Shown: piece after piece, positions 1 through 64,000 of the stretch
Layout of the letters: every line of letters begins with the position of its first letter
Position numbering within the stretch: position 1 is the first letter of the stretch
Assembly: GCA_965655095.1 (NCBI GenBank)
Contig: OZ296650.1
Span: 134,230,001 to 134,294,000, forward strand
Direction: 5' to 3'
DNA: 64,000 nt
From: Haplodiscus bocki
Lineage: Eukaryota
Made by a program: the position numbers and the translations under genes
Notes under the pieces: generated by a model
Databases searched by the model: none
The model's input: the letters and a program-made list of their open reading frames with translations, nothing else
Told to the model about the DNA's origin: nothing

Positions 1-640
1 CTTATTGAAATAAAGCATTACCAGATTGCTTCCCCTGAAATAACGTTTTATGTAACTTAGATTCAACTTCATTTGTTGAAGTCAAGAAACTGCCGATTGT
101 TTTATTTCTCTTGAATTGCTATCATTGTCTGTGCACTGATTTGTTTAATTTCGAAAAGGTTTTCTTTCGTGTTAGAGTGGTTTTCACGAAAGAGAAATTT
201 TTATCCTGAATTAACACGTTTCAATTCCCTATAGTCTTTTCATTTACATTCACAGCCGTTAATGATGCGTGAAAGTTCGTTGAAAAATGTAATTGTGAGC
301 AAACATAAACGTCATTCACTGATGACTGAACTTTGAAACTGTTGACACGTGAAAAAAAGTTGAAAGAAGTCAGTTCCGCCTTTTGCGTGGCATCACGTAA
401 AGGAACATGTAACTTTTTTCAATAGAAAACTAGCAAGAAGTTTTTTATCAAACCTTTTAATGTATACTAGCGATTCTCACTGTGACGTGGAAATTTACTG
501 AAGTTGTATTTGATCATGTTGAACTTCATCTTCCTTGTTTTAATTTTTGAGAGTAATTAGTTCTGCGTCCTGAATAGGTTGACGAAATGTCACTGTGTAA
601 ACCGCGTTGTATAAGATGATGCTTGAAAAGATTGTTCCAG

Positions 641-1654
641 ATGATGACCACCCGTGTAAATACGGCCCAAATAACTGCTCCCAATTTCTTGCGCAACAGT
701 GAGAACACATATATCCGAGGTGTTGTTTTGGTTTTTAAAAAATTTGATCGTCCCCTACAGTTATTTCGACCGCAAGCTGTAAAAGCTAAACGAATGAGCC
801 CTGACACAAACTACGATCGCCTAATCATCATCGGCGAAATCGAAACGCGAGAATGTTTTGCAATAATAGCAGATTCTGCGCAGAAAAGTTCACTCCTTTT
901 TGCTGACCGAAAACTAACTATTGGTGCCATCGTTGATGTGAAAGAAGCTATTTTTTCCAACTCCTGCCTTGGTAACGATCGAACTAATCCAATTTTTAAT
1001 GTGTCTCTTCCTTTAGAGGTAGTTACAGACGACCCGCCAATGGAGCCTATTCCTATCGATTTGAATCCCTCGACGAGTGCAATGTTTCACTTCTGTCTCC
1101 CAAACCGACCCCTTTCGTTTTTGCACGCAATTCCTGTGTTTCCGACTTGTTCCGGTTTTTTGTGCGACAGAAGAAATAGAAAAAACGAAAGCATTTGCGC
1201 ATGTTTGCAAAAATCGACTTTGTCAGCGTGGGTCATGTCAGCAAGGGTAATTAGTCAGGACATATTGAGCGAAGACGATGATCCTCTAACAGGGGATGTT
1301 CTGCAAAGTTTGTCATTGACCAAACTTTTTTGTGAGGAGGCTATCATTAGATCGGCATACACATCAATTGACAGGGGACTTTTGAGAGACGCTGTCATGC
1401 GTGTTGCTAACCATGTTAATAGCAATGGTGGGTGGAGAGTGTCAGGCTTCTATAAAACTGCTTTAACAGAAGAAAACATTGCGCAAAATGTTCAAAGGGT
1501 AAGAATTTGTCGAATCACTCCAGCGATTGAGATCCCTGTGCACTTGAAATACAATGTGATTCCTTGGATTGGAGACAATACAAACCAGCCACCACGCCTT
1601 CTTCACGCTAACGCAAATTTGCCAGCAACTAACAATGTAAACAACATGAGATGA
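641..1654 (+). CDS. Element accessory protein, ~337 aa, probable OB-fold/Zn ssDNA-binding (RPA-like) protein; intact
   Basis: ORF 623..1654; the first ATG is at 641, directly after a ttccag acceptor-like site. Homologous to the ORFs at 17585, 22088, 35329 and 49939. Beta-rich N-terminal half (IRGVVLV, YDRLIIIG, LTIGAIVDV) and a CSGxxCDRR..CAC Cys cluster. The coding call is strong; the OB-fold call is inference. Confidence 0.75.
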   Translation: MMTTRVNTAQITAPNFLRNSENTYIRGVVLVFKKFDRPLQLFRPQAVKAKRMSPDTNYDRLIIIGEIETRECFAIIADSAQKSSLLFADRKLTIGAIVDVKEAIFSNSCLGNDRTNPIFNVSLPLEVVTDDPPMEPIPIDLNPSTSAMFHFCLPNRPLSFLHAIPVFPTCSGFLCDRRNRKNESICACLQKSTLSAWVMSARVISQDILSEDDDPLTGDVLQSLSLTKLFCEEAIIRSAYTSIDRGLLRDAVMRVANHVNSNGGWRVSGFYKTALTEENIAQNVQRVRICRITPAIEIPVHLKYNVIPWIGDNTNQPPRLLHANANLPATNNVNNMR

Positions 1655-2419
1655 ACGATTAATTGAAGCAACAAAACTCAAAGAAATGTTATGTCAATCA
1701 CTGTTGTGACATTTTTTACTACAGCTAAAAATTACCTATAGAATCAAGAGAGGTATTACAGACAAGTAAAACAATGTGCCAGTAATCATTTAGCAAACTA
1801 CCGAATGTTGCTTCCATGCAACATCGACTGTTACAAGGCATTCGACCGTAAGGTGTTTGCCCAAAATTAGGAGTTCATTTGGCGTTAAAGAAAATGAGAG
1901 TTGTCGTAAAGTGGATTTATTTTACGTGCATCAAAATGAACTGTCAATTGTTGCTACCATTCATTTGCAGTTAAATTGAGAGTTTACTTTGTTTCACTGG
2001 ACATTTTTATTTATCACAGTTTAAATTGTTTTCTGTAGTTGGTACATATAATGTTCATTAAAAATTAAATGGATCATCTAGAGAAACGTTTGTGTGCAGC
2101 TCCTTACAACTAATTACCTCAAACCTAATCCGTTGTCCACTGAGACAAAAAAGTTGCTACAGTTATGTAACTATAACATAATTTTCGCAAATTATTTTAC
2201 AAATAATTCGGCATTGGAAGAAAAAAAAGATAAGATTTTTTCAAAAATAAATTGGCCCAGAATAAAACTTGTGTCACCAACAGTTTGCCAGCCCAGTAGT
2301 TTACTACGAAATTTCAGCAAAGCTTGATTGCCGCCCCTTCAAAAAGTTGACGGATTTCAGATAGATCAATTAGAAAAACTGACTTTTTTAGCAGGTTTTT
2401 CTTTTTTCTTCGACAAAAA

Positions 2420-2927
2420 ATCGTCATAACCGTCATTATTTTCGGCAATTTGGCCAAAACATTTTTTCGCTGCAAAATTATTTTTCTTTTGATACAGGTC
2501 CCGTCACGTTGTGACGAATGCTCACATCACTTTTTTAACATCAACCTGGGAGAAATGACAAAATGCTCGATTTTGGCCTCTTTTTGACAAATTTGAAAGG
2601 TCATATCTCCTAGGGCAAAAGGCCCTGGCCAAAAATTTTTGGCATGTAGGTAGTTAACAGCAAATGTGCTTCACACAAAAAATTTGGGTCCAATGCTATG
2701 GGTAAAGTGTGGAGATATTGCGGGAAAAACATCGAAACCTGCCAAAAAACAGGATCATTGCGTCATATCTCCCCAACCAAAAGAAAAAAAATGATGTAAG
2801 TGCCAAAAATCTTCATACATCGGCGGACTCTATCCACATGCAAAGTTTCATCAAAATCGTATGGTTAGGTTTCGAGATCGTCTCCTTTTCGGCGGGTTGA
2901 GTGTAAGTGTAAACTTGATTTTTGAAA
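2420..2927 (+). repeat. Subterminal module of unit 0 (degenerate ~162-bp repeats, CGTCA-rich)
   Basis: Nearly identical to 19345-19855. Shares blocks (cgtcataaccgtcatt, gcttcacac, tgtggagat, gatcatt(g/c)cgtcata) with 34240-34681, 47575-48124 and 60915-61450. GTCATATCTC occurs at 2600 and 2762. Confidence 0.75.
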
Positions 2928-3025
2928 CTCGGCACAGGGGCCCCTCCCCCGCCTCGTAACAGTTTTGTGTCGCTAAAAAGCTTGACCACCCAGTGGAGGC
3001 AACGGTGAAATTTACTAGATGGCGG
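2928..3025 (+). other. Inter-element junction motif J1 (CTCGGC, GC hairpin, GCCTCG, then core TGACCACCCAGTGGAGGC, N14, CTAG)
   Basis: Core at 2983-3000 and CTAG at 3015-3018. The same architecture recurs at 19912, 48175, 61505, 62561 and 63615. Confidence 0.85.
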
Positions 3026-4149
3026 GTTTTTTTGCTTTCAATTTTTTTCCGGTATCAATTCTGGTGATTGGTTCGAAGTTCTAAATTTTTGTTTATATAA
3101 TTGAAAACTGTTGTTTGTTCTTTTTTTACGATACTTTTCTCCAGGCTGAAGATTAACTCGCACAGTGCAGATGCAACTGATACGCACAGAGTTCATCTCA
3201 CACCGTAAATGTGGGGTTGTTCCTCAAAACCTAGTAAATTTCCTGTTTTTTTAAAGTTCATGACAGCAGCAATGAAGTATGGCAAACGTACTTTCCGGTC
3301 GATTTTTTCCCGAAGTCAGCTCAGAACAGTAAAGTAACAATTTTTCCACTTTATCAGCTGCTGAATTAAAATATAACTCCACAGACCTACCCGTTACCGG
3401 CTTCCATAACAATGGAAGTTTTCAGTTCTGTTCCGTTCCATTTCTTGAATCCACTTTTTTCAAAGAAATCTTTTGGTTGCGTAATGAGTCATGTACTTGA
3501 AGCATTTCTTGCTGGTTCTCGTTGCCTTCTTTTGTGCTTCAGAGGAACAATATAGGTGTTGTGTGCTATTTCACATCAGTTGATTTTTTCAAAAAATGAA
3601 AATGTACAGTTAGGTGTTCTGTACTAGACAAATTTATGAAAAAGAAGTTCTGCGCCATGACATTTCATCCACTATGTAACAATATTGTTCATGCGTCGTC
3701 CAAAACATATATAGAATGCTGGATGCTTCCGGAAAATAAAAACATGAGAAAAAGTTACTGGTCATAATCATCATTGAATTGAGACAGTTGTGTTCATAAA
3801 ATAATCGTCAACCATAAATTATGACAAGATGAAGGCCAATTTGATGGCGGATCAGTACTGATGTCGATTAAATATCTGCCTTCCATTTATGAAGTCGTGA
3901 AAGCAGTACTTCGATTCTCTACATTTTGAGCTTTCGTCAACATGAAATGTGGTTAGTGGAAGCAACTTTAACAATATGTGGAGGTAACGTGTAGAGTTAA
4001 AACGATGCTTCTCTACTGTTGATGTCGGTTTTGAGTGTTTCCGATTTTGAAGATTTTACTGCTCTACAGACCGTTCAAAAATTGTTTGCGTTTCACAAAT
4101 TCTTATATCTGAGTTTTTCGGAAGAATATATCTGGTTGGTTTTGAAGCC

Positions 4150-5330
4150 TACTTATCGGAGTTTTGAACTTCTTTCAAAATAAGTTTTGATTTTTCTGTG
4201 AAAAAATGCTTCTCGTTGTCAAAATAAAATATCCGCCGTTGAGCGAAATATGGCAACGTGTTATTCCTCTGAACTCATGCCGAAGTTAGTTTTTGGATAA
4301 AGTGTTTTGATATGGAATCATTATTTCTTTAGCGTCAACTCGACATTGCCAATTTCCCATCCCTCATTTGAACCCTCTGAAATAGATACTTTTCTCATGT
4401 CATTCGATCGTTTGAACTTTTCATATTGTGAATCGTGACTCACTGAAGTCTCAACTGACTATGGTCAACATCGTATGGCTTCTGTCGACAAATTGAGCCA
4501 ATTGTTTTGGGTAATTTTTTTAAATGACGTTTTCGTACACGAAGAATGCTGGATATTGTTTGTAACAATCGTTGCCTGAGTACTAGGTGTTCTTCCACAA
4601 TTTCTGAATTGCAAAGGGGAACTCCGCTGTTATCATCGTACATGAATTGCTAATGTTACTCATGAAGCATGAGAAACGTAAGAAAAATTGAAAAGTGTAC
4701 AACATAATCGTAACTTTAAATTTATACCGATGGATCCCAAAGATGATTGGCATTGAACGAACAGGGTCAACGGGCTCCTCAAATTTGAGCATGTTAATGG
4801 TTTTGCTACGGAGGAGAAATTGTTTTCATTAATTTTTTACCCATCTACCGCCTAAAAGCTACAGAGTGTTAACGTGCATGTTCGCAGAACTACATTACCT
4901 ATAGGTTTCTGACAAACTTGTTATTGTGTGCGCTATTTCATCGTGTTTTTGCTGGCATTGAAAGTTCTTCATGTTTGTGTTTCCTGTGAGGTTCGTTTCA
5001 TTTTCTATGTGAACAAACCAATCAATCGTTTTTACCATTGTTGGAACGAAATTCAAGATCGAATAACCATAATTCATATCATATTTTCAATAGTTTTGAC
5101 CGCAAAAAATTGCCTTCTCCGACGACATTGTTTGGATTCGGACGCGCTTTGTGCAGATATTACCGAAAAAGCTGCGGAAAATACTTATTGATGAAAAGTA
5201 CTGCCTCAACATTTATAGCAAACTGTGTGTTATCTTTGGCATGGAAGTACCACGCATCTGACTGTGGATCAACTTTGGGACGCACTTATCAGAAAACGAT
5301 TTCTCTTTGACGGCAATTTCAATAACTTTC
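4150..5330 (-). pseudogene. Possible decayed spliced gene, divergent from RepHel A; product unknown
   Basis: Chain of short minus-strand ORFs (4895..5077, 4583..4792, 4440..4643) near donor-like (gtaatg, gtgagt) and acceptor-like (ttttag, tttcag) sites, with stop-interrupted protein-like frames. No recognisable motif. Confidence 0.25.
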
Positions 5331-6765
5331 GGTAAATACTGAATGTTTACATTCTTCAGTTGTTCAAATGAAACTTTGACAAGGTTTAATTGTTAACATG
5401 TTTTTTTGCGGGGGAAAAAGACGGCCTCTTGCTGTTTCTTGTTTCAAACTTTCAAAAATCCCATCTGTTTTGTACAATAATCAATTTGAATGTTTTATTT
5501 TTAGCATATACATAATCGCTGTCGACATTATTGACTGATATTTTATTGATCAACCGCTGCTCTGAGCAATTGTTTTCTCAACTAAATCACCCGGTTTTTT
5601 CAGATTTCATAATTTCCTTATAATGCAATGATTTTGGAAGCCAAGATTTCCCCAAGAGAAAAACAAGATGGTGAGAATCTTTCAAACATAGTTCTCTAAT
5701 TTGTTAGGCTTTCCGGTTTTCTACATGATGACGTTTTTTTGTGGTATCATTTTTCACGTCATGTCAGACTTCAGTCATAAACAAAAGGGCATAATTTCAG
5801 TTTGCCTGAATTAGTAGTAAGATCTCAGAAAAACTTTATTTTTTCTCCATTTCTTGCCTCCACATTTTTCATGATTACTCTTTTCGTGTTAACTTGCAGC
5901 CCTGCTAAAGTGCACACTTTTCCGAAACACCTTTGGAAATTCGTATGAGTTCGCTCAACACTCATGCGTTCTCAGTTGGTTTTTCCAACTGAACCTTGTT
6001 GGCTTCTAAGAACAATTGTGATGTGCATTGTAGTCTCTTTCACTGAGGATTGGGGAAAAAACTTTCGAATTCAACGAACTCGCCGTGTACACTACTAATT
6101 GACGGGAGTCCGTAACATCGGGATGCGTTCCACTTGTATGGGTGAACGGAAAATAAATTCTTATATACGATTTTCAAACAACACAAGATTCGCAATTAAC
6201 ACTCATTACATCGCCGCCTCTACGAGTAAATACCTGTTTGTTTTCTTTCTCTGATGAATGCCTTGGTTTTGCTTCGTTAACTGCGCAAAACCAAGGCCCA
6301 CATTGCATATATTTTTCTGGATACTGCTTTTTTCGAATTCATTAGATGCTACCGTTAATTGAACAGTTTGAAAGTTTTGTACGTTGGTCCTATAGTGGCG
6401 CCCACTCTTTACAATGTATTCACTATTGAAGATGAGTTATTGATAAACTTTTGCGCGAAGTTTCTTGTGAAAGAGTAATGCCATCTGGCAAGAATGATTT
6501 GAAAAGACGTCGCTGTGCAAAATGTGGACGCTTCAGTGAACGTAATCACTCCTGTCCAAATAACACCGACAATGTTTCTTCAACTAGCGAACCATTAGGA
6601 ATTTTGTACAGTATACCTGACAGTAATTTGCTGGTCTCCTCTGTTGATGCCCTGCACTTAGAATCAACGTTGGAAGCGATGGGACTATCCTGTTCCCCAA
6701 CAAGCGGCATAATTGGGAATAAAACTAACATTCGCCTCAGTTCTGTTCAACCCTCGCACAGTCTT

Positions 6766-7175
6766 TCTATAACGGGTGATGGTAATTGTCTTTTCACTGC
6801 CCTGGGCGTTGCCCTCGGTTTTTCTCATGAAAGTGGTCATGATTTGAGGAAACTTATTGTGAGTAACATGGACTCGGTGACTTTTCCGGAAAACAGTTTG
6901 CAAACCTCAATCTATTCCGCTGAGTTCCCCAACCAGAACAAACTTCTCACGAGCCCAACTGTCAACCACTACCTGCAGACATCGCGAATGGCAGAAAATG
7001 GAGTTTTTGGCACTTGTGTGGAAATTTATACCTTTTGTCAAATTTTTAATTTGGACGTTTATGTATACCACAATATTTTGAAAAGTTGGTTCGTTTACAA
7101 ATGCGACTGCTCAAATGACAGACAAGGAGTTTTCATTCAACAAACGCGAACTGGAGATCACTTTGAGGTAATTAG
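6766..7175 (+). other. OTU-like cysteine protease domain
   Basis: ITGDGNCLFTAL (catalytic Cys box), FGTCVEIY and GDHFEVI (His box). The same motifs occur in C, D and E. Confidence 0.85.
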
Positions 7176-10100
7176 TGGCTTGACCGAAACATGCCACACT
7201 TCATTACTCCTATCAGAAGATTTAGCTGGTTCGAGTAGTCAATGTGGAAATTCAGCAATGAATACTGACTGCCACGTAATCCAGACAGCACTTGAAGCAC
7301 TTGATGAAACTGAGCCCTTGCAGAAGCGCAGACGGACTTCAGATTATCCAGTCGGCACACATTTGATCGACATTGGAGAAACTAATACAGCTGTGACATC
7401 TTTTTGTTTGGCGGAAGCTCTTTGTGGTGCAGAAAATACTACAACGCAAAATGGAGGCCGTCCTCCAACTGCTGTGGAACATCGACAACATCAATTTCAC
7501 AGATTGCCTGGAGGTGAGTTGACTGATGAGATTTTCCTGAAATTAACTGAAAACTTTGTACCACCACCGAAATCGACTGAAGAATCAACCGTTGAAATCG
7601 AGTCAAAATTGGTTGTGACAGATACTGTCGATGCTGCCAACATTTGTTGCAAGTGCATGCGTCAAGCCACGGTATATTTTCCGTTCGACATTAAGGCCTA
7701 CAGCAAAGTTGGATTGGTTAATAGAAAGTTCGGCAAAAAGCTGAAAAACGAAAATGTACATCTGTGTTGTTTCTGTTATAACTATTGTACTGCACCAAAG
7801 GTTAACTGGCAAATGGCTTGGCCAGCTGTTTTTTTCACGCTCCTTTCTGATACTTCCAGACCCGAAGCTTCTTTAGTCGCTATTTGCTCGCTGTTACCCC
7901 TGGAAATAAGGCAACATTGGCTAGGGGTAATTACCCTTTTCCCTATCTGCATCCAGCGTGTTTTAAATCGGCCGCGTATTCTTGGCACTTGTACTGTTGA
8001 TGGAACACAGAGATTGAAACGTTTCGAGCAACTAATGAGAACAATGAGACAAAAAGAAATGGCTGAAGCTTTGGACTTGGAACCGTATCCAAACATACGT
8101 TGCCCTTCTGGTTGTTGGACGTTTATCGAAGATCCTGGGTACATACCAGCGCAGCATTTTATAAACTTGATCGACAGAACTTTCACATCATTCCAAGCGT
8201 CTGCATTCAAAAAACTCAGAGGCGCCAGACTCGACTTTTTGCGCCCTTTGATGTGTTTAAAAACGTTTCTAGTGGCTGCCACAGTGCGGTTACATGAGAA
8301 AGAAGGTTTGGTTGTGCAAACTTGTTGTGCGCATGACAGGGGATGTGCGTTACAGTTCTTGCATCCCCCCAGGCATCCGGAGCTGGGACGAATTCCAACT
8401 TTGTTTGAGGAACGATTAGCCATTGCATCACCTTCATTGTCGTTTGTGAGTAGCTTAAAGGCTAATTATGCTAGCCACAACTATCAACTGTTTCGGAGCG
8501 TTGGGTCTTATAGTGGTATGAGTACTGTTTCATTGAGACGTAAACGGCGTTGGAACATCACTAGCAACCGTTTGTTCCAAGCTGAAGGAACTGTCATGTT
8601 TTTCAGGTCAGATATTCCCATTTTAATTAGACAATGGGTTGTTGAAGGTAAATTGATTGAAGATGTCGCCACTGATCTCTCTCAATATCAGCCGGAAAAT
8701 GAAAAAATGGCGGAGCATGTCGGCGTAGATCTTGACACCTGCATTCGATTGACGAAGGTGATGGACAAAAACGAACAAGAACTTTTGAGTAATGTGAAAT
8801 TTCTTCAGTGCTACGCTTTGGCTCAACCAAACAATGAACATGGTTGCTCACCTCCTCCTCTGATCAATGATACTGGCGATACACTCTGGTTTCTTCAAGC
8901 AGCATGCTGCATATCTCCATTTTTATGTTCATCCATGGTGTCTGGCGTTAATCACGTTTTCGCAACAAATTTGTTTTCACTGTTGCGTCATACATTTGCT
9001 GGGTTTGGAAAAGAAAGCAAGTTGCAGCGTACTTCACAAGCTCAAGCTGACATTGACAGTATATTGAATAACGCGGCGAATAACAATGACAAGCCAAACA
9101 TGATTTCAAACTTTTTTCAGGAGGGTGGCGTGGTGTTGCACGCATTATGTGCTGACTTATGCCATCTGCAGTTGAGCCAAAGAAAAGAATTAACTGAGAA
9201 AATTCTGCGCGACGTAACCGTGGATACGAAACACGTGATCGCTACAACAACTGATGTAAACAATCTGAGGAACAAGGTCAACCCACCTCTCAACGTCGTC
9301 CTATTTGATGTCCCATTTGAGCTTGTGGGATGTGGTTGTGGTTCTCGGGGTACAGATGCTGTAATTTTGCTTCGGCACGGTGGTCGCTTCTGCAATTTTT
9401 GGCGTATAGTGAAAGCTAACAAGTTTGCTGAACCTTTGTTGGACTCACCTGAGACCTTACTAGAAAAAATTCTACGAGGCTACTGGACTTTTTTAATCTA
9501 CCGAGGAACTAACTCTAAAAAGGTGTCGACTGTAAAGTGGCACTATCTTAGTAATTTAACCGGTCAAGGAATTTTCATTTGTGACAAACATGATGTTCCG
9601 TTAACGAGGGACTTCCGACGTAGCAACTACTTCTGTCGATGTGGAAGGTCATCATTCCTCAGATGTGCCTACTCAAAATGCAACAGTTGTGTGTGTAAGA
9701 AACACTTCGACGAGGGAATGAAACATCCAAACTTACGAGTTTTAGTTCGACCTACAGCAGAACAAAAATTAACGCCTGAAAAACCGACCGCTGAAGCTGC
9801 AATCATTGCTACACAGTGTGAACTGAATTCCAACTTAGGTAGTTTATGTGAGCAGGACAAAAGCGTTGTTGAACCAGATCTATCCATCAACTGTTCCAGT
9901 CAAAACTCAAGTTCATCATCAATAGCTTCTTTTTTGTGCAACAACATGAACGCAAACTCGATCAGCGAAAGTGAATTGGCGATGAATAAATTGAACGTGT
10001 GTTCCGGTGAAAGGGCCATTGTTGCTGTACAAGAGGCTTTCAGAGAAGAAGACTACAATATTCCTCTCCACATACTGTTGAATTCTCGATGCAACTTACT

Positions 10101-10584
10101 GTACAGGAAAAAAAGTCATCCCATTTCCCTGACCGTTAAGGAGAAACGTTTCATGGAAAACATTACAGCTTCTTCAACATCATCAACGCCTTTGCTTCAA
10201 CCGGAAGGGCTGCTTTTTCCTTCTATTTTCTGGTGCCAAAGTTCCGATGGCAGCATTGAAGGAGCAATTCCAATATCCCTTTTCCAATCCGAGAAATACA
10301 ACAAACAAGTGGGGTTTGCAGGGTTAGAGAACATGCTACGAACTCGCATCACTGATGGGTCGCTTTTAACCTCCAGTCACACATCATATCTTCAGTTCGT
10401 TTTTGACTGTCTTTTAAACTTACAACTGAGTAAAACTGATATTCGAATTGTGTTGAACAGAGGCTGGCAAGAATTGGGCAGTACGCCTACTAATTACCAG
10501 TACTTTTCCAATGAAACGTTCAAGTTTGATTGTGCAGAATCCCGGAAAAATGTGTGCGAAGTAGCAGCACTCATTAGAGATAAA

Positions 10585-11390
10585 AACCCCACTTATTTTG
10601 TAACATACACATGTGGGCAATCTACTCACCCTGGCTTGCGGAAAATTTTTCAGGCTATTGACAAACTTTACCCGCCCGATATGACATCCAAAGAACTGAG
10701 ATTATCTGTAATACAAAGTGAATTAATGCCTATGCTTAGATGTTGGCATCGCGCCTCACAGTATGTAATGCAATGGTTGAAATGTTCGGCCGAGCAACCT
10801 TTGGGACCAATCTCTCACTTATGGATGAGATACGAGTGGCAAGACGAAACTTCGGCCTTTCCACACATCCATGCACTAGTGTGTACCGGAGAAAACAAGT
10901 TTGGTCCGGAAGTTCAATCCCGAGTCTGCTGTTCAAAAGAAACATTCATGGGCGCCTTAAGCAAATGCTGTCCAGCGTTATCGGATAGCGAACGGTTCCG
11001 GTTGGGAGAACTTTTCCAAAAATACCAACGGCACGATTGTGGCAAGGGAAAAAATAGATGTAAAAAAAACTGATTGGTTAGGAAAACCAGTGTGTAGAGT
11101 GCCCAAATATCCTGCATCAGTTGGGTTCTCTTTTAAAGAAATACAACCTAATTACTCGAAAGAAACTTGGGACTTGTTGAGAAGCATGAAATTGTCCTAT
11201 ATTGACCCTAACTCTTCAACAGACAAAGTTGAAGAAGAACTTAAAGCTGGAAAACATCACTACCCTGCTGCTTACAAGGAACACATGTCACCAACAAATG
11301 CTGCGTTGTTTGCTTTCACGGAAAGCAGTACGAACGTCCAAATTTGTGACGACGAAATGTGTTCACGATACGTTGCAAAGTATGCTGCCG
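10585..11390 (+). other. HUH (Y2) Rep domain
   Basis: Motif 1 YFVTYTC (10594), motif 2 RYEWQ...FPHIHAL (HIH at 10864-10872) and motif 3 YVAKY (11369-11383). Confidence 0.9.
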
Positions 11391-14070: not shown

Positions 14071-14194
14071 GAGTAAAAAGTCACAGTGGTCGGAGCTGAG
14101 TACCGAAATCCTCCAGAAGTGTTCTTCCCGTGACCCAACGATCTTCCATGGTGCTACAAACCCTTTTCCATCAACCATCAGTATACCGCAGGAG

Positions 14195-14440
14195 ATTGTT
14201 GGCTACTGTTACCTTATTCAGAGCGTCCCCCAAAACAACTTGTTATATATTGGTTCAACAATGTGCCTCAATCGACGAATTCGTGAACATAATGTTGGCT
14301 TGGGAGCATCATTCACACAGGATCCCTCTCGAAGACCTTGGGTTTTGTGTGCTTATGTGACCGGCTTTCTTGCAAGCAGCTCAACGGATCGAATAAGGTT
14401 TTTTGAAAAACAGTGGCTTGAGGCAGTTACTAAAGTGCTT
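14195..14440 (+). other. GIY-YIG endonuclease domain (SLX1/UPF0213-like)
   Basis: GYCYLI...YIGST..LNRRIREHN.G.GASFT...RRPWVL..YVTGF...FEKQW. Confidence 0.85.
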
Positions 14441-55200: not shown

Positions 55201-58200
55201 ATGTTTGAACAAACATAAGGAAACTTCAGAAGCCAACACGCCGACTCTGTCAAGCTGATAGCCCTTCCAGTCAAAGTTTTACGCTTCTGGCAAGAGCTTT
55301 GGTTCTTTGACCAGCGAACTCCGCTTATTTTTTCGTTTGACTGATCCTCAACGTTGTAGCCAAAAGTTGCATCAGTGGAACTACTGTAAAGGTTTACGGT
55401 ACTTCGTTCTTCTATTCCCGCAGCGTACTTGGCCAAATACCTTGCACTCATATAGACGTCACAAATCTGTAAATTTGTACTTGACCGAACCAAAGCGAAA
55501 ATTAGGGCGTTTGTTGGCGAAAAATGGGTACCTTTCTCTGACGGATAATGATGTTTACCACCACGTAGCTCATCAATGAGAAACAACTGACCGGTCACGG
55601 AATCTTCAAACGCAACATTCAGTTTTCGTAGAATATCCCATGTCTCTTTGGATAAATTTTTCTCGACTTCCTTGTAGGAAAAAGCGACACTGCTTGGATA
55701 AGCTGGAACTCTGCAAATTGACTTTTGTAATCTGTTCGATTTCTTGTGGCAACGCATTTTTGCTTTCCTGCAATTATGACTTTGGTATTTTTGAAACAAG
55801 ATCTGCAAATCTTCTTTCTCCTCCGGTGAAAATTTTTCCGATCCCACTTCCGCGTTCAGATTACCTAAGAACGTTGGTAAGCTACAACAAACTCTCGATC
55901 GAACTTTTTCGCTGAAAGCATTTTCTGAAGTCCAGATAAGAGCATGGATATGTGGGAAGGCACTTGTTTTATCTTGAAATTCATAACGATACCACAACTT
56001 CCGTACTCTGCCTAACGGACGTTCCGTAGAAGTTTCGATGTACTTCATCACGAGTCGGGAACTGCGTTCCCACGCTCGTAGCATTGTTATCATTTCAGCT
56101 TGAACCGCAGAATTTCGAATCTCCGAGCTGGTTATTGTTTCAGGGTATTTCTCTTCCAAAGCTTGAAAAAACTTCCGTACTCCAGGATGAGTAGACTGAC
56201 TGCAAGTGTAAGTGAAAAAATAGGTTGCAGGTTCATCCTTCAATGCACACTAAGTTCATTGACATTTTTTCTTGAATCACTCTGATCGAAGTGCATAGCT
56301 CCTTCTTTGACGCATTGGCCACTTACGTTTTTGTCAGAATCTTGTCCCCAGCCTCTGTTCAACACCAATCTAGTGTCTTTTCCGCGCAAATCTAAACTAA
56401 AAACCGAATCAAAAGCGTACTGTATGTATCTGGGATCGGATGCCGTTAACAGAGATCCATCTTTGACTCTTGCACGCAGCATATCATCTAAGCTTGCAAA
56501 ACCAAATTTGGCATTGTTATTCTTGTTGTTAAACAACGAAGCAGGTATAGCACCTGCGTAACTGCCGTCCTCATTCTGTTTCCAAAAAATAGTTGGGAAC
56601 ATCATCGCCTCTGGTTGAATTAGTGGTACCGAATTACACGGTTTGGTAGCTGTAACAATCTCCAACACTCTTTTGTGTCTTGCAGTCACGTAAATGGGAG
56701 ACCCTCTACTACGTTTCAGAAGGCCACACTGACCATTCAAAAGAATATGCAGAGGTAAATTGAAATTGGTGTCCGTCATTACAGGTTCCCTGACATAGCT
56801 TGGTTCCAGTGCAGCATCCGTTACCTCCGGTAATGTCAATTCCGAAGAGTCTGTGTGTTCATTCAACAATCCTGCATCCATTAGGAAATCACTTTGAGAA
56901 GTTGACGATGAAGAGACAGAGTTGCTCCACACACCTCCATCTGAAAGATTTTCCTCGCTGACACTCCTGCCGTAGCTACTGTCACCACTGATGCTCCTTG
57001 CAGCTTTGTCTCCATCGTTCTCAGACTTCGGCTCAGATTGGTTGTAACAGACAGAAGCGATGTCTTCTGAAGACGATGTGAACGGCAACTTATCTGTTCG
57101 CCTCACATTCGGAACATCCGCAAGATTGTCTTGCTGCATTACGTCTTTCCGACAAAGACAAGAGGTGCACTCGTTAACTGGACATCGGAGAAACGAAACC
57201 CGACTACATTCACAGTAATAACCGCTTCCAGGAAAATCTCTGGTTAAAGGCAGCAAATGTTCCTCACAAAAAAACTTCCCTTGTCCAGTGAGTGTTTGGA
57301 AATAATCAAGTTTCAATTGTTTGATGGTTTGCGTTTGCACAAGGTAATAAATTGCGACATCCCAATGACCTTTATTGTGATGGTCGACGGCCTCCAACGG
57401 TGGAAGGTTAACACGACTAGCAAACGGTCTCTTGTTCTCGTAAAGCCAAAATTTATCAAAAGAACCTCCATGCCTCACAAGCGATTTCCTGCTAATGTTA
57501 TCTGTCAACGTCGAAATGCACCTCAACTCGTAGTCTCTATCGTCAACAGTTATGGTTATGGGTGGGCAACTTTTATTGCGCAAATTTTTTCGTGCTGGGT
57601 TTGTAACAATAACAGTTTGGGTCGAGCTTTGAAGTGAACTCTCAAAAGCAACAACCATTTTCGACTTGTCCTTCAAGGGACAATGTGAAACTTCATCTAA
57701 AGCTGATGTCAAAGTTTCCGAAAACATTACCGCGGGAAACTCACTGTGTGAATTGACTTCAAAAATTTTGGAAATTCGGCCGTTAAATTGACGCTACCAG
57801 TCCAATCCTTCCGACCAGAAAAAACAACAGGTTCCGAAAATTTCAAAATGGGAACAAGATTGGGAGTGGACATACAAGCTGACGACAATTGATCGCAAAG
57901 AGGTGGAGAGATGCAAAACGCTGTCTGTAAAAGAAACATCAGTTCAGAAGTTCTACAACTGATCTTAGGAGGAAGGGCGCCAAAGAAATTGTTACCATGG
58001 GCGAAAGCCAAGGATTTGAATTTAGCGCAAAGAGAGTTCTCCAGAGACACACCCAATGATGACATCAGAGATAAAGAGGACTTCAAAGAGACACTTGTTG
58101 TGGAGAGCAAAGATTGCACAGCTAATCTCTCGTTGGGACGAAACAAAGTCTGCTGTCGAATTTCTTCAGATATTTCCTTGGAATCAACCAAGTTTTGTAG

Positions 58201-60431
58201 TAACACTTGTAGATCTGGTCTGAAAAAAGAACACTGCGCCTCCGCTTTAACCAACAACTCCGACGTGCGCATCCAATTTCGCTTGGACGTTAAGGATATA
58301 CTGCTCATTCCAGAATAGTTACCAACAGCCTTGAGCAATTGGTATGTATGGCTCGAATAATTAGCCTTGACGTTTTTTATGAGGCGCAAAGTTGGCATAA
58401 TTAAAGCTAACCTGTCTTCACAAGGCACGCTCAATCTTCCCAGTTGGGGATGTGTAGGTGGATGTAAAAACTGCAAATTTGAACCATTGTGGTGATCAAG
58501 ACAAGTGCCAATAACAGGACCCTTGGAACAGTGAACGAAAGCGAAAGCGGAAACTTTGAATTTCTCCAGCACATTGAAGGGGGTGCTCCAATCAGATCTT
58601 ATTCCACGAAAATGAGAGTTAAATGACGACTTAAAGGACACGAAACTCGGCATCAGTCCATTGATGAGATGATGAAACGGAATGAAGCCAGTTTCCTCAA
58701 CGAAAGTGAAACAACCGAAGGGATATCGACATTTGGGATAGGTTTCTTGATCCAGTGCTTTTTCCAACCGTTCAGAAGATCCCGAATTAACATGAGCATC
58801 GAAAATTGACTTTCTCTGTGTTGTGTCGGACACCAACGAAGGAACATTTTGTTCACGTACGGCTGGATGTAGATGATTGAAACGATGCTTCCAACTTTGC
58901 CTGATCTCCGAAGGAATCATTGCATACAGAATTTTTACCTCATCATCCAAAATTGAAGTGTCATGAATGAGGCTACTTAAAACGGTGGGCCAAGCGTCTT
59001 TCCAAGCGACTCTGCTGCCCTGCAAATACCGTAGACAAACTTGGCAAACTTTTTGACCAACACGACATTTGCGCCCAAATTTTTTCCTCCGCCCGCTAAC
59101 ATTTTCCAAAACAAAGAAAAACAATTCGTAATACTTCGTCGATCTTCGCAAACAGTTGGCACATTCTAGGTGCCCAACAACAATCTGTGAATCACTATGA
59201 GAAGTGGTGTCGGAAAAAGCAACCGCTTCACAAGAGTCTACTGTGACTTCTGCTGAATCATTGTGTTGTGGTGAATTCTGCCGAAAAGTGGTCGTTGCAA
59301 CAAATGAGGGAATGAAGTTAGATAACGCTGGCAGCGGTAAAGTTTCGAAATGTGCAGACGAGCTCCTGTTGTGTTTTTCCACTTCATGATTACTCAAATT
59401 TTGCCTTTTTGCAAAACTTGAAATTACGTCGAAATGATTTCCTGAAATACTGTGACGAACAAAAATCGACGGAATATCCAAAGCATTTCGGTCACCTTGA
59501 TACTCATAAACAAACCACGAAGAGGTCATACTGTGATAAACCACAACATCAACTCGAGCCAGCTGTGCAAATGTGAAAAGTTCAACGCACGTTCCAAATA
59601 CACCATCCGTACCCATGCGAGACACTTCCAAATAACTGATGACATTTCGACAGGAAATTGCTCTGACACCTGGCCCTCCAGGAACATAAGCTTCCAAAAA
59701 TTGGCTTTGTAAGCCAACACTGGGTAAATGGTAGCAAATAGCAGCCCGTATGAAAGCATGGTTTGTTGCATGCGAACCGATAGCTACAGAAAGTGCAAAA
59801 AAAGGCAATTTCCGTCTCCTGGAACATCAACACAACTTCCAGGAACCAAATCTGACAATGGATGCTCATCAATCAAACTCGTTGGGAGAAACAAACCTTG
59901 AAAACTGACTTCCAGCTTATTGCAAACATGCTGTAGACTATGCTGACTTCCAATGATTTTTCTACCCTTCGAAATTACCGAATACAAATTTGCTTCCAAC
60001 AATGGATCAGCATCTGATGACAGCGGAGTTAATGTAACATTCGAAATATTCGCCAATTTTGGACTTTTCAAACACTTGCATTCCCCTTTCCCTTTGAAAC
60101 AACCGCACCACACACACTGCTCAGTCACATTGTGACGTCGCCTCTTCGTACCTGGGCCAGGATTCAATTCCAATCCTCCACGAAAAAGAGCTAACACAAT
60201 AAGACGTCTAGTTAAGCTTGAATCGTTGCCACCACAAAATTGAAGCTGTCCTTGAACGCAACACGCCGATTGACCATTCCGGTAATTTCGTTTCTCAATG
60301 CAGAAACCACCGAATAACGACACCGTGTAATTATGTGTCTGAGACAACGTTTGCAAACTTTTTTCACTTGAGAAAATTGATGTTGAACACCAAAAAAACA
60401 AAAGCATTGTTAAACAACCGTAAAAATCCAT
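52268..60431 (-). pseudogene. RepHel polyprotein of E, many frameshifts
   Basis: Eight collinear ORF fragments, from 59784..60431 to 52268..53074. Motifs GDGNC, YFFTYTC, FPHIHAL, YLAKY, GPPGTGKS, GDFRQLPP and FYVG...RRRVHEHN. Confidence 0.9.
60153..60215 (-). other. 2A/StopGo-like peptide (RRLIVLALFRGGLELNPG|P)
   Basis: The NPGP motif is retained although the surrounding N-terminus has diverged from C/D. Confidence 0.6.
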
Positions 60432-60914
60432 TGAAATCTACAAAATAATCCAATTGGAAAAGGGATTAGAACAACATATCCAATGATCATTCGCAAATCG
60501 GAATAAGCAATAGCGCTTCTGGGCTGCAAAATCAATACAAAACTTTACACATTTAAATGAACAATGTTAGTAATGTTTTTGAGAAAACAAAGTTTACTAG
60601 CATGTTCATCATATGTCACGTCACAGCATTCAGCATCCGCGACTTAAATACACATCAGAAAGCCGAGAACATTGCAATGGCATTCGCATGCTACCTTCAA
60701 AACCTACTTTTGATCACACTTTGTAGAAAAAATAAAATTTTGTCAACACGCACAACATGTTTGCATAAGTTTTTAATCCACTAACTTTATAAATGTGTCC
60801 GATCCAAAAAGCTTTCAAAAAAGTCGAGAAAAACTTTTTAACAGTCTGTAGACCGTTGTTTAGTATCTTTTAACTAAAAATACAAAAAAAAATCAGCTAA
60901 AATTTTTTTTTGGA

Positions 60915-61450
60915 AATGTCGTCATGACCGTCATTTTTTCGTTTTAATCGTCATTTTTTCGTCATTCTAAACCGAAAAATTTTGTCGTCGAGACAAGTTC
61001 TTGCAATTGGTAGAGGTTGTTCCGCTGTCCGGCAGCCCTAGATGTCAATGCTGATATTTCGACAAAGGAGAAATGACGGATTGATCATTTTTTTGAAATT
61101 TCTACTGCTTTCATCCGTCATATCTCCACTTTTATGACGAGTTGGCGGAAAATTTTTTGCATGCGGATAACTCACAGTCAACATGCTTCACACACACAAA
61201 GCTAGCCCAATGCGTATGGTTAGTTGTGGAGATTGGGCCAAAAAACTTCGGTAAGGAGCCAAAAATGACGATCATTCCGTCATAACTCCTCCCCCAATGA
61301 ATCAATCATGACGGGACCTACATCAAAATTCTTATATTTGAAAGTTATGGCCACATACAAAGTTTGACCAAAATCTAATGGTTGGAACGCGAGATCGCCT
61401 TATTTAGCCCCCCCACGGACGGATACTATTTGCTACGCACTATATTTTAA
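60915..61450 (+). repeat. Subterminal module of E
   Basis: About ten CGTCAT/ATGACG sites; GTCATA(T/A)CTCC at 61117 and 61279. Copied in the downstream 1.055-kb units. Confidence 0.8.
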
Positions 61451-61550
61451 GCTCGGCGAACGGGTCCCTTCCCGGCCTCGCAGATTGTTAAAGGGGTATC
61501 ACCCTGACCCCCCAGTGGAGGCTAGGGTACCAATTACCAGAGGAGGCTTA
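61451..61550 (+). other. Junction motif J4
   Basis: Core variant TGACCCCCCAGTGGAGGC at 61505-61522, followed by CCAGAGGAGGC. Confidence 0.85.
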
Positions 61551-64000
61551 ACTGTAGGTACATATTTGCGTGAATAAAAACTGTTCAAGTTAAAGAAATT
61601 TTGATCTATGGGTAATGACGTTTACATTTTTGCTATTGAGTCTCCTACTGTTTTGTGTTCCACTCAGCAAAGGAGACAACTGCACCCCAAATGCTTTTAT
61701 TGTGGTCCGAGCCCGTTGTTCATCCGATTAGCTACTCGCTAATCTCCGGAACAACGGGAAAAATCAATGTTCAGAAGAAATTCCGTTTTTGAAGAAAGCT
61801 GTGGTTCACAAAAAAAATCATCTCCATTGAGTTATAAAACTGGTTAGAAAACCAGAAAACACTTGTTTACAGCGACTGCATTCATTTTTGTTGTATTCTA
61901 CTTGCTAAAACACACTTTTTGGGGAAGTTTCTTTTTTTTTTGAAAAACTCGTCATAACCGTCATTTTTTTGTCATAAAAGTCATTTTTTCGTCATAACCG
62001 TCATTTTTTCCGTCATTCTGAGCGAAAAAAAATTGTCGTCGAGAAAAATTCTTACAATCGGTGTGAATTGTTCCGCTGTCCGGCCGCCCCAGATGTCAAT
62101 GTTGATACTTCGAAAAAGGAGAAATGACGGAATGATCAATTTTTTTTCAAATTTTCTATCAGTTTCATCCGTCATATCTCCACTTTTATGACGAGTTGGC
62201 GGAAAATTTTTTGCATGCTCATAATCCACACCCGAAATGCTTCACACACAAAAAGCTAGCCCAATGCGTATGGTTACTTGTGGAGATTGGGCCAAAAAAC
62301 TTCGGTAAGGGGCCAAAAATGACGATCATTCCGTCATAACTCCTCCCCCAATGAATCAATCATGACGGGACCTAAATCAAAATTCTTAGAATTAAAAGTT
62401 ATGGCCACATGCAAAGTTTGAACAAAATCTATTGGTTGGAACGCGAGATCGCCCTATTTAGCCCCCCCCTACGGACGGATACTATTTGCTACGCACTATA
62501 TTTTAAGCTCGGCGAACGGGTCCCTTCCCGGCCTCGCAGATTGTTAGTGGGGTACCACCCTGACCACCCAGTGGAGGCGAGGGTACCAATTACCAGAGGA
62601 GGCCTAACTGTAGGTAGACATTTCCTTGAATACATTTTGTTCAAGTTAAATTATTTTTTGATCTATGAGTATTGATGTCTACATGTTTGCTATTGAGTCT
62701 TCTACTGTTTTGTGTTCCCCTCAGCAAAGAAAATTACATGACTCCAAATGTTATTATGGTGGTCTGAGCCCGTTGTTCATCCGATTAGCTACTCGCTAAT
62801 CTCCGGAACAACGGGAAAAATCAATGTTTAAAAGCAATTCCGTTTTTGAAAAAAGCTGTGGTTCACAAAAAAAATTCATCTCCATTGAGTTATAAAACTG
62901 GTTAGAAAACCAAAAAACACTTATTTACAGCGACTGCAAATATTTTTGTTGTATTTTACTTGCTAAAACACACTTTTTGGGGAAGTTTCATTTTTTTGAA
63001 AAACTCGTCATAACCTTCATTTTTTTGTCATAAAAGTCATTTTTTCGTCATAACCGTCATTTTTTTGGTCATTCTGAACTAAAAATTTTTGTCATGGAGA
63101 AAAATTCTTTCAATTGGTGTAAGTTGTTGCGCTGTCGGGCAGCGCTAGAGGTCAATGTTGAAACTTCGACAAAGGAGAAATGACGGAATGATCATTTTTT
63201 TTCAAATTTTCCATCAATTTCATCCGTCATATCTCCACTTCTATGACCAGTTGGCAGAACATTTTTTGCATGCGGATAACCCACACTCGAAATGCTTCAC
63301 ACACAAAAAGCTAGCCCAATGCATGTGGTTACTTGTGGAGATTGGGCCAAAAAACTTCGGTAAGGGGCCAAAAATGACGATCATTCCGTCATAACTCCTC
63401 CCCCAATGAATCAATCATGACGGGACCTACATCAAAATTCTTAGAATTAAAAGTTATGGCCACATACAAAGTTTGAACAAAATCTAATGGTTGGAACGCG
63501 AGATCGCCTTATTTAGCCCCCCCTACGGACGGATACTATTTGCTACGCACTATATTTTAAGCTCGGCGAACGGGTCCCTTCCCGGCCTCGCAGATTGTTA
63601 GTGGGGTATCACCCTGACCACCCAGTGGAGGCTAGGGTACCAATTACCAGAGGAGGCTTAACTGTAGGTACATATTTGCGTGAATAAAAACTGTTCAAGT
63701 TAAAGAAATTGTTCTATGGGTAATGACGTTTACATTTTTGCTATTGAGTCTCCTACTGTTTTGTGTTCCACTCAGCAAAGGAGACCACTGCACCCCAATT
63801 GCTTTTGTTGTGGTCCGAGCCCGTTGTGCTTCCGATCAGCCACCCGCTGACCTCCCGAACAACGGGAAATTTCAATGTTTAAAAGAAATTCCGTTTTTGA
63901 AAAAAGCTGTTTTTCACAAAAAGAAACCTTTTCCACTGAGTTATAAAAGTGGTTAGAAAATTGAGAAACCTTTCTTTACATTGACTGTAACTTTTTTATT
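61514..64000 (+). repeat. Tandem ~1,055-bp non-coding units (two complete, one partial); probable non-autonomous derivatives of the E family
   Basis: Cores at 61505, 62561 and 63615 (periods 1056 and 1054). Each unit has ~0.4 kb of its own left-hand sequence plus E's subterminal module and junction. Confidence 0.9.

What the first reader, a model, noticed from the sequence alone, without database searches (positions are those of the whole stretch)
1..64000. Polarised array of divergent rolling-circle elements sharing one junction: candidate self-targeting, integron-like Helitron system
Seen: at least three clearly different families (0/A, C/D, E) plus non-coding mini-units abut with no evident host DNA between them. 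Every intact boundary has the same junction in the same polarity. Known: Helitron arrays are usually explained as head-to-tail concatemers of one element, and HUH relaxases such as TrwC can catalyse site-specific strand transfer into their own nick site. Inference: excised circles integrate into an existing end-to-end junction, regenerate it, and so stack unrelated elements like cassettes. Simple concatemerisation cannot explain mixed families.
Basis: partly seen in the sequence, partly recalled or inferred. Interest (0 to 1): 0.92.

Follow-up and report, generated by a model that had tools for sequence, protein, structure and literature searches.

The report
Self-stacking rolling-circle transposon array
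The whole 64 kb window is a one-directional stack of different Helitron-like (rolling-circle) transposons joined end to start at one exact cut site, and comparison with other copies suggests that new elements insert precisely at the end of a resident element, which would be an unusual, self-targeting way for such transposons to build islands.

Summary
The window is filled by eight units with no host DNA between them: a partial unit 0, A, C, D, E and three 1.05 kb non-coding mini-units. Six of seven boundaries carry the 18-mer TGACCACCCAGTGGAGGC, always on the + strand (0.05 expected by chance). The C|D boundary is a deletion.

The elements resemble Helitron2/Helentron (HLE2). Their roughly 2,650 aa protein carries OTU, HUH-Rep, Pif1 helicase and GIY-YIG, next to an RPA-like ORF. 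All copies in the window are broken.

The cut lies at ...TGACCACC|CAG.... Three 99.9% identical copies elsewhere share the right end (RTS) to the last base and then have three different right neighbours.

In 13 related loci plus the window and two metagenome contigs, 31 of 31 canonical left ends (LTS) directly follow an RTS. RTS hits never change strand within a locus. RTS ends pair with 16 kinds of right neighbour.

I judge targeted insertion at a resident RTS end or junction the best explanation, at about 0.6. Tandem duplication and deletion also shaped the array. The chemistry is inferred and 'integron-like' is only an analogy. I call it a new variant of a known kind.

The parts
1..2990 (+). 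Unit 0: 3' part of an old A-family element. It holds the RPA-like ORF (623-1654), the CGTCAT motif (2421-2437) and the RTS (2869-2990).
   Evidence: 89% identical to 16942-19919; RTS HMM hit ends at 2990.
2983..3000 (+). Junction core 0|A; cut between 2990 and 2991 (TGACCACC|CAGTGGAGGC).
2991..19919 (+). Unit A (16,929 bp), an autonomous-type element whose coding block runs in the same direction as LTS to RTS.
   Evidence: Collinear with L001 283-17240 at 98.9% and with L003 at about 90%. The identity stops at the cut on both sides.
6451..14569 (+). A RepHel pseudogene in four overlapping ORF pieces (OTU, Helitron_like_N Rep, PIF1, GIY-YIG).
   Evidence: intact relatives are 2,647-2,778 aa.
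17564..18597 (+). A copy of the conserved ~330 aa accessory ORF (RPA/OB-fold-like), split by a frameshift.
19346..19362 (+). CGTCAT-type repeat motif about 570 bp inside the right end of A. Equivalents lie at 2421, 34310, 47617, 60919-60955, 61949-62005 and 63005-63061.
   Evidence: 14 hits, all on +, 0.14 expected; alignment.
19912..19929 (+). Junction core A|C; cut between 19919 and 19920.
19920..34683 (-). Unit C (C/D family). Its coding block is reversed relative to LTS to RTS, and its RTS lacks the last ~196 bp.
   Evidence: Collinear with L016 8690-23039 at 89.9%; ORFs.
34683..34684 (.). Deletion junction C|D with no core. It removes the end of C's RTS and about 1.5 kb of D's LTS side, including the C-terminal third of D's ORF330.
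34684..48182 (-). Unit D (C/D family, 91% identical to C), with reversed coding block and a complete RTS.
48175..48192 (+). Junction core D|E (one mismatch, CAGCGGAGGC); cut between 48182 and 48183.
48183..61512 (-). Unit E (third family), with reversed coding block. The RepHel pieces span 52268-60431, ORF213 is at 50940-51584 and ORF330 at 48941-49939.
61513..62568 (+). Mini-unit 1 (1,056 bp, non-coding). Its RTS is of the same type as E's.
62569..63622 (+). Mini-unit 2 (1,054 bp).
63623..64000 (+). Mini-unit 3, cut by the end of the window.

Best explanation
The window is part of a transposon island built by a lineage of Helitron2/Helentron-like rolling-circle elements. Each unit runs from a left end (LTS, starting CAGTGGAGGC...) to a conserved right end (RTS). 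The RTS spans about 125 bp and ends in a short stem followed by TGACCACC. The HUH Rep presumably nicks the top strand at CCACC|YAG. I propose that a transposing element, probably a circle carrying an RTS-LTS joint, is inserted exactly at the 3' end of an RTS already in the chromosome, or at a host site that mimics the nick site. Resident RTS joins incoming LTS, and incoming RTS joins whatever lay downstream, so the junction is regenerated and polarity is fixed by the termini. Related Reps would recognise related RTSs, so different families and their non-autonomous mini-units stack in one direction whichever way their genes point. Local tandem duplication or concatemerisation and deletions then remodel the stack. 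Shown: the anatomy, the exact cut site, mixed neighbours and absolute polarity. Inferred: that the resident RTS is the target, and the strand-transfer chemistry.
For: (1) Six same-strand cores in the window against 0.05 expected. (2) The cut site is fixed to the base: three G copies are identical over the last 70 nt of the RTS up to ...TGACCACC. They then continue as CAGTGGAGGCGACGG (P0026-family LTS), TAGCGCTGGAGGC (1.4 kb unit) or CAGTGGAGGCACCGG (mini-unit). (3) The same holds for A (window vs L001), F (L002 vs L019) and the P0026 family (L018 vs L021). (4) 31 of 31 canonical LTS hits directly follow an RTS. Only 30 of 40 RTS ends are followed by a canonical LTS; 31 counting L013, whose RTS is cut off by the contig start. 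This asymmetry points to the RTS as the required partner. (5) 37 RTS ends fall into 7 RTS types and 16 downstream types, giving 25 distinct pairings. (6) RTS hits never change strand within any of 9 loci with two or more hits, although the coding strand differs between families. (7) One array edge abuts a host rootletin-like gene region, and that flank also begins with CAG. (8) The core CCACC|TAG is conserved in a second assembly, in families whose protein is only about 32% identical. (9) Full-length relatives keep the HUH motif (PHxHA), the RYxxKY tyrosines, Pif1 and GIY-YIG. (10) For Helraiser, circles with a precise RTS-LTS joint exist and the joint is cleaved on the plus strand (PMC5876387). 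(11) In Paramecium, strand-specific targeting gives absolute LTS/RTS polarity with ORFs in either orientation (PMC13085455).
Against: No filled/empty pair of the same site was found, so insertion is inferred from differing neighbours. No left edge of an array was seen, so the 5' half of the target is unknown. The loci were reached through RepHel proteins and total about 350 kb, so solitary non-autonomous copies could be missed, and selection against insertions in unique DNA could mimic targeting. Three of the seven boundaries in the window join members of the same family, and L016 is a 99.8% tandem, so duplication or concatemerisation is clearly also at work. Several junctions are imprecise (window C|D, L005 4456, L016 8026, L018 2626). 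Predicted DNA structures at the RTS end fold no better than shuffled sequence (z from -0.8 to +0.9).
Confidence: 0.6

Rival explanations
1. Hetero-concatemers: during rolling-circle replication, Rep bound to the 5' end of one element joins it to the RTS 3' end of another element. Mixed multimers form off the chromosome and integrate as blocks, so the array reflects a few block insertions rather than site-specific targeting.
For: The junctions are the exact RTS-LTS joints expected from termination chemistry. Same-family tandems exist. Terminator bypass and tandem Helitron arrays are documented (PMC4067079, PMC5876387).
Against: Neighbouring units differ greatly in apparent age. G copies are 99.9% identical between loci but sit beside mini-units that are only 85-90% identical to each other. 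A is 98.9% identical to its L001 copy but 89% identical to neighbour 0. One recent element has three different neighbours, which needs three separate hetero-joins. Block insertion also does not explain why no LTS lacks an upstream RTS.
Confidence: 0.15
2. No targeting: elements insert with weak specificity. Arrays then arise from unequal crossing-over, gene conversion and ectopic recombination within the conserved ~125-600 bp right-end region, together with purging of insertions outside gene-poor islands.
For: The RTS regions are conserved across families, giving substrates for recombination. Satellite-like mini-unit arrays and deletion junctions are present. Helitron-derived tandem arrays are common in animals (PMC11934779, PMC7492417).
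Against: Recombination inside the conserved region should put breakpoints anywhere within it. Instead, identity between copies ends at the same phosphodiester bond in every case examined, including where upstream RTS types differ right up to the terminal 11 nt. Random insertion would give both orientations, yet no strand switch is seen. One array edge lies only about 4 kb from a host gene exon, so islands are not confined to gene deserts.
Confidence: 0.15
3. Assembly artefact: repeats collapsed or were mis-joined at the conserved core.
For: Repeat-rich sequence; some related contigs show raised coverage (L016 contig 128x against about 37-73x for the others).
Against: The same architecture recurs in the window, in 13 loci from two independent long-contig assemblies and in short JGI metagenome contigs (L006, L013). 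Units are 1-17 kb and diverged by 1-11%, so they are easy to tell apart. The conserved core region is only about 170 bp.
Confidence: 0.03

Closest known systems
Helitron2/Helentron group (HLE2), including the 'HLE2-reverse' forms (FoHeli3-5, proto-Helentron)
   Same: A giant RepHel protein with HUH and two-tyrosine Rep motifs and a Pif1 helicase. An upstream OTU domain, an RPA-like accessory ORF and a C-terminal nuclease. A conserved right end with a subterminal repeat and a short stem before the terminus. Non-autonomous derivatives that share the ends. Families whose ORF is inverted relative to the termini (PMC11417382, PMC4067079, PMC5148889).
   Different: The nuclease is GIY-YIG, not an AP endonuclease; I found this noted only once, in a moss family (PMC11417382). 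The ends are CAG... and ...CCACC, not T-flanked, and no T|T target is seen. The inverted repeat is only about 7-8 nt. Every LTS sampled sits on another element's RTS. The DUF6570 marker was not detected.
Paramecium aurelia chromosome-end Helitrons (PMC13085455)
   Same: Many divergent families stacked with an absolute LTS/RTS orientation bias while ORFs point either way. The paper explains this by strand-specific insertion into a defined target sequence.
   Different: There the target is host telomeric C4A2/C3A3 repeats, which remain as spacers on both sides of each copy. Here there is no spacer, and the apparent target is the element's own right end. The Paramecium elements form a separate clade and no GIY-YIG is mentioned in that paper.
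Tandem Helitron arrays in bat, silkworm, maize and plant centromeres
   Same: Head-to-tail RTS-LTS joints. Thomas et al. also remark that distantly related Helitrons sometimes lie directly next to one another (PMC4067079, PMC5876387).
   Different: Those arrays are mostly copies of one element and are attributed to terminator bypass or concatemers. Systematic, base-exact stacking of different families with no solitary left ends has not, to my knowledge, been described.
Bacterial HUH systems with end-related target choice: IS91/ISCR, IS200/IS605, and TrwC relaxase integration at oriT-like nic sites (from my own knowledge of these families)
   Same: A single-strand HUH nuclease whose target resembles its own cleavage site. 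This gives orientation-specific insertion next to a defined sequence and regenerates the site.
   Different: Different protein families, prokaryotic, with short targets. No homology was tested here; the comparison is by mechanism only.
Integron cassette arrays
   Same: Unrelated cassettes stacked in one direction at a recombination site that is regenerated.
   Different: Integrons use a tyrosine-recombinase integrase, attI/attC sites and a common promoter. None of these is present.

Membership tests
Helitron-like elements (eukaryotic rolling-circle transposons) | RepHel protein: HUH motif, two-tyrosine motif and Pif1-type helicase | tested here: met
   Pfam Helitron_like_N and PIF1. Conserved PHxHA and RYxxKY in 11 full-length relatives. 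The helicase matches Helraiser 7lcc at E = 1e-7.
HLE2 (Helitron2/Helentron) | Short asymmetric terminal inverted repeats: at the 5' end, and 38-60 bp from the 3' end | tested here: inconclusive
   The LTS start TGGAGGC is the reverse complement of GCCTC(G)CA, which lies about 45-50 nt before the RTS end in all families. It is only 7-8 nt long with an indel, below the 12-16 nt described.
HLE2 (Helitron2/Helentron) | Stem-loop between the right repeat and the 3' terminus | tested here: inconclusive
   Short 3-4 bp stems of differing sequence (GGGG/CCCC, GGGT/ACCC, GACC/GGTC, GCT/AGC) sit just before TGACCACC. Folding energies are no better than for shuffled sequence.
HLE2 (Helitron2/Helentron) | Insertion between T and T | tested here: not met
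   All junctions read CCACC|YAG, and the one host flank begins with CAG.
HLE2 (Helitron2/Helentron) | Rep groups with HLE2 in phylogeny, or carries the DUF6570 marker domain | tested here: inconclusive
   DUF6570 was not reported by Pfam at E <= 0.01 for a full-length protein. No tree with HLE1/HLE2 reference sequences could be built with the data at hand.
Helentron sensu stricto | C-terminal apurinic/apyrimidinic endonuclease fused to RepHel | tested here: not met
   The C-terminal domain is GIY-YIG (PF01541, E about 1e-9) in A, D and all full-length relatives, with no Exo_endo_phos hit.
HLE2-reverse (ORF inverted relative to the termini) | Conserved hairpin-bearing end lies upstream of the transposase gene | tested here: met
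   True for C, D, E, L004, L016, L017 and L020. The A, F, G and P0026 families have the opposite arrangement and form one clade (support 96/98) nested among the reverse lineages.
Integron | IntI tyrosine recombinase with attI and attC sites | tested here: not met
   No such domain appeared among the Pfam hits of the large ORFs scanned from A, C, D and E or of the accessory ORFs. The junction is a Rep-type nick site.
Telomere-targeting Paramecium Helitrons | Copies flanked by telomeric repeats | tested here: not met
   Units abut directly with no spacer.

The most novel reading that the evidence does not exclude
A eukaryotic HUH transposase lineage has made the 3' end of its own kind its integration site. 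The Rep, possibly helped by its GIY-YIG nuclease on the other strand, cleaves a resident RTS at CCACC|YAG and transfers an incoming circle into it. Unrelated families and their parasites therefore self-assemble into growing, strictly polar 'safe-haven' islands. This would be a cassette-stacking system that needs no integrase.
Probability: 0.5. Interest if true: 0.78.

Novelty: new variant of a known kind. Interest (0 to 1): 0.62.

Why it matters
Helitron integration is the least understood step of rolling-circle transposition, and known targets are only dinucleotides. A lineage with a base-exact, self-derived target of at least 8 nt would provide a tractable substrate for biochemistry: one oligonucleotide would serve as both donor joint and target. 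It would also explain how Helitron-rich islands and Helitron-derived satellites grow in one direction. Together with the Paramecium telomere case, it would show that strand-specific targeting is a recurring strategy of these elements. The GIY-YIG fusion in place of the AP endonuclease is a barely described architecture. Site-specific HUH integration is also of interest as a tool.

Tried and rejected
1. I first took the CGTCAT motif for the junction. I rejected this when homology breaks between copies fell 370-600 bp to its right.
2. Rfam gathering-score scan of the window and L001, L003, L004: no known RNA family, so no RNA-gene target (the first attempt, exceeded the size limit).
3. Repeat-induced point mutation or CpG decay as the source of the 9-11% divergence: rejected, since ts/tv is about 1 and CpG o/e is 0.90.
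4. A thermodynamically significant hairpin at the RTS end: not supported.
5. The JGI metagenome scan for the 18-mer gave 9 contigs, of which only L006 and L013 are true relatives.
6. No homologue carrying a source name or organism was found, so the host species remains unidentified. A rootletin-like host gene next to one array suggests a ciliated eukaryote or animal.
7. Pfam found nothing for ORF330 or ORF213. A structure model gave only weak RPA/OB-fold matches for ORF330.
8. PMC2785268 (maize Helitron distribution) is not held in the library, and the barley paper was not relevant.
9. I treated the flank 'X' after two RTS ends (L001, L004) as a possible array edge. It more likely represents a TAG-type LTS, like those in the second assembly.

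Full report
**What is in the window**

The window has about 40% G+C and no N. Self-comparison finds four repeats:
- 1-3006 matches 16942-19935 at 89%.
- 21443-34255 matches 34684-47524 at 91%.
- 34221-34682 matches 47532-47986 at 85%.
- A repeat of about 1,055 bp runs from 60921 to the end of the window.

The long ORFs encode OTU, Helitron_like_N (Rep), PIF1 and GIY-YIG domains. Protein comparison shows three families: 0/A, C/D and E. Each has the same gene set of RepHel plus a ~330 aa ORF, and C/D/E also carry a ~213 aa ORF. All RepHel genes in the window are broken into three to seven pieces. Intact relatives elsewhere are 2,647-2,778 aa.

**Finding the true boundary**

A motif TCGTCATAACCGTCATT occurs 14 times, always on +, but it is not the boundary. 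A 98.9% identical copy of A in another contig (L001) matches window 2983-19919 and nothing beyond. The homology breaks of the C/D pair also lie to the right of that motif.

The boundary is the 18-mer TGACCACCCAGTGGAGGC. It lies at 2983, 19912, 48175, 61505, 62561 and 63615, all on +, against 0.05 expected by chance.

Upstream of it lies a conserved right end (RTS) of about 125 bp. In order, it contains GAGATCG, CTCGGCA, GGGGCCCCTCCCCCGCCTCGC, a short stem of variable sequence, and TGACCACC. Downstream lies a left end (LTS) of about 40 nt, CAGTGGAGGC..ACCAG..GGCGG.

**The cut site**

Three copies of another family, which I call G (L021, L022, L023), are 99.85-99.96% identical to each other. They are identical over the last 70 nt of the RTS up to ...TGACCACC. 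After that they continue with three different units, starting CAGTGGAGGCGACGG, TAGCGCTGGAGGC and CAGTGGAGGCACCGG. The first base after ACC therefore varies with the downstream unit.

A junction in L016 joins ...TGACCACC directly to internal sequence GAGAATTT of a truncated copy. The cut is therefore CCACC|YAG. In a second assembly (L015, L017), whose families are only about 32% identical in protein, the junction is again CCACC|TAG.

**Unit map**

| Unit | Coordinates | Note |
|---|---|---|
| 0 | 1-2990 | partial |
| A | 2991-19919 | complete |
| C | 19920-34683 | last ~196 bp of RTS lost |
| D | 34684-48182 | ~1.5 kb of LTS side lost |
| E | 48183-61512 | complete |
| mini-units | 61513-62568, 62569-63622, 63623-64000 | third is cut by the window end |

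The C|D boundary is a deletion with 1-2 nt of microhomology. A, C and D are collinear with independent copies end to end, so no host DNA lies between units.

0 and A code on the + strand, while C, D and E code on the - strand. All termini nevertheless point the same way. Array polarity therefore follows the cis-acting ends, not the genes.

In a tree of the helicase-nuclease region, the families with genes co-directional with LTS to RTS (A, F, G, P0026) form one clade with 96/98 support. That clade is nested among lineages with the reversed arrangement. A single inversion of the coding block is enough to explain this. ORF inversion relative to the termini is known in Fusarium Helitron2-like elements and in Paramecium Helitrons (PMC5148889, PMC11417382, PMC13085455).

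**Related loci**

Protein searches found relatives only in two ENA long-contig assemblies, and none carries a name. Four 90% clusters hold 458 member sequences. Judging by the contig lengths listed, at least eight contigs carry members of two or more clusters.

I fetched 13 loci of about 20-28 kb by protein identity, without regard to their surroundings. Two true JGI metagenome relatives came from a scan for the core. I then searched all of them with separate RTS and LTS profiles.

- All 31 canonical LTS hits, 6 of them in the window, are directly preceded by an RTS end.
- Of 40 RTS ends in the window's own genome set, 30 are followed by a canonical LTS (31 counting L013, whose RTS is cut off by the contig start).
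- The remaining RTS ends are followed by one of four things: a TAG-type start (L001, L003, L004, L022), a truncated element (L005, L016, L018, window C|D), or, in L020, unique DNA carrying two rootletin-like exons. That flank also begins with CAG.
- RTS hits never change strand within a locus.
- The 37 RTS ends examined fall into 7 RTS types and 16 downstream types, with 25 different pairings.

**Same element, different neighbours**

| Family | Copies compared | Identity | Neighbours |
|---|---|---|---|
| A | window vs L001 | 98.9% | window: between unit 0 and C; L001: between a mini-unit and a TAG-type start |
| G | L021, L022, L023 | 99.9% | three different right neighbours |
| F | L002 vs L019 | 98.7% | two different left neighbours |
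| P0026 family | L018 vs L021 | 98.6% | two different left neighbours |

In every case the identity ends at the cut, even where the upstream RTS types differ right up to the terminal 11 nt. The young G copies sit beside mini-units that are only 85-90% identical to one another. This indicates that G arrived at arrays that already existed.

**Interpretation**

These results are what targeted insertion at a resident RTS end or junction predicts. The asymmetry matters: every LTS has an RTS before it, but not every RTS has an LTS after it. Together with the host flank starting with CAG, this suggests the target is the RTS 3' end, or a mimic of the nick site, rather than a full junction.

The mechanism is plausible on known chemistry. 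Helraiser makes circles with a precise RTS-LTS joint and cleaves that joint on the plus strand (PMC5876387). Cleaving a resident RTS is the same reaction as termination. The full-length proteins keep the HUH and RYxxKY motifs and a GIY-YIG domain that could nick the other strand. The role of the GIY-YIG domain is inference only.

**Limits**

- No filled/empty pair of the same site was found.
- No left edge of an array was seen.
- No circles have been observed.
- The sample is about 350 kb and was reached through RepHel genes.
- Same-family neighbours (0/A, C/D, the minis, and the 99.8% tandem in L016) and several imprecise junctions show that duplication or concatemerisation and deletion also shape the arrays.
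- Predicted structures at the RTS end fold no better than shuffled sequence. A 4 bp CCAC/GTGG mini-hairpin with the cut in its loop recurs, but it is weak.

The rivals are hetero-concatemer blocks, recombination within the conserved ends combined with selection, and misassembly. Each is less consistent with the data, for the reasons given under the rival explanations.

**Comparison with known systems**

The protein and end architecture are closest to HLE2 (PMC11417382, PMC4067079). Several defining features are not met or only weakly met:
- There is no T|T target.
- The nuclease is GIY-YIG rather than an AP endonuclease.
- The inverted repeat is only 7-8 nt.
- DUF6570 was not detected.

I therefore call the lineage HLE2-like rather than a Helentron. 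Thomas et al. noted that distantly related Helitrons sometimes lie directly next to one another (PMC4067079). The Paramecium study shows absolute LTS/RTS polarity arising from telomere-repeat targeting (PMC13085455). The present case differs in using the element's own right end, with no spacer. 'Integron-like' is an analogy only.

**Verdict**

This is a new variant of a known kind, with interest 0.62. My confidence in RTS-targeted stacking as the main process building the array is about 0.6.

Noticed in passing
window 2421-2437, 19346-19362, 34310-34326, 47617-47633, 60919-60955, 61949-62005, 63005-63061: A conserved block about 570-600 bp inside every right end: a T-run, GAAAAA, one to three 20 bp tandem copies of CGTCATAACCGTCATTTTTT, then CGTCATTCTGACCGAAAA and a short stem. 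GTCAT/ATGAC words are also dense over the next ~400 bp of the mini-units. This could be protein-binding repeats (an origin-like element) or a promoter; in the reversed families the block lies upstream of RepHel.
   Followed up: partly
window 48941-49939 (-), 623-1654 (+), 17564-18597 (+), 21099-22091 (-), 34661-35329 (-): A conserved ~330 aa accessory ORF with no Pfam hit. Ten homologues share invariant Cys171, Cys176, Cys187 and Cys189. The AlphaFold model (pLDDT 75.7) gives only weak matches, but all are to RPA, CST, Teb1 or SSB OB-fold proteins (best E = 2.8e-3). It is probably an RPA-like single-strand DNA-binding protein.
   Followed up: partly
window 50940-51584 (-), 23062-23682 (-), 36292-36951 (-): A second conserved accessory ORF of ~213 aa, found in C, D and E but not in A. 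It has no Pfam hit and its function is unknown.
   Followed up: no
window 2991-3030, 19920-19960, 48183-48225, 61513-61555: Each LTS carries a second, junction-like copy of the motif (CCAG/CTAG followed by .GG.GGC) about 24-26 nt after the real cut. In E the second copy, ACCAGTGGAGGC, fits the consensus better than the first. It may be a pseudo nick site or a second Rep-binding site.
   Followed up: no
window 61709-61760 (and the same place in the other mini-units): A long imperfect hairpin: a 10 bp outer stem CCCGTTGTTC/GAACAACGGG encloses a 7 bp inner stem GATTAGC/GCTAATC. It lies about 240 bp before the CGTCAT block.
   Followed up: no
L016 1-27944 and L020: Apparently intact, 99.8% identical tandem copies of the C/D family on a contig with 128x coverage (other contigs have about 37-73x). 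This suggests recent activity or collapsed extra copies. One of the two junctions is precise; the other joins the RTS to a copy lacking its first 440 bp.
   Followed up: partly
L003 16640-21305, L005 1-3414, L022 14300-17586: A different non-coding unit family with a period of about 1.43 kb. Its LTS starts TAGCGCTGGAGGC, three extra bases compared with the canonical start. It forms its own arrays next to autonomous elements.
   Followed up: partly
L017 (assembly ERZ25074608) 1-27209: A second genome shows the same architecture: an autonomous element flanked by arrays of ~1.3 kb units. The junctions read CCACC|TAGC, and a conserved palindrome GGCATGCC..GGCATGCC lies about 50 nt into each LTS.
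   Followed up: partly
whole window: Substitutions between paired copies have a transition/transversion ratio of about 1, and CpG observed/expected is 0.90. There is therefore no sign of RIP or of strong methylation-driven decay in these repeats.
   Followed up: yes
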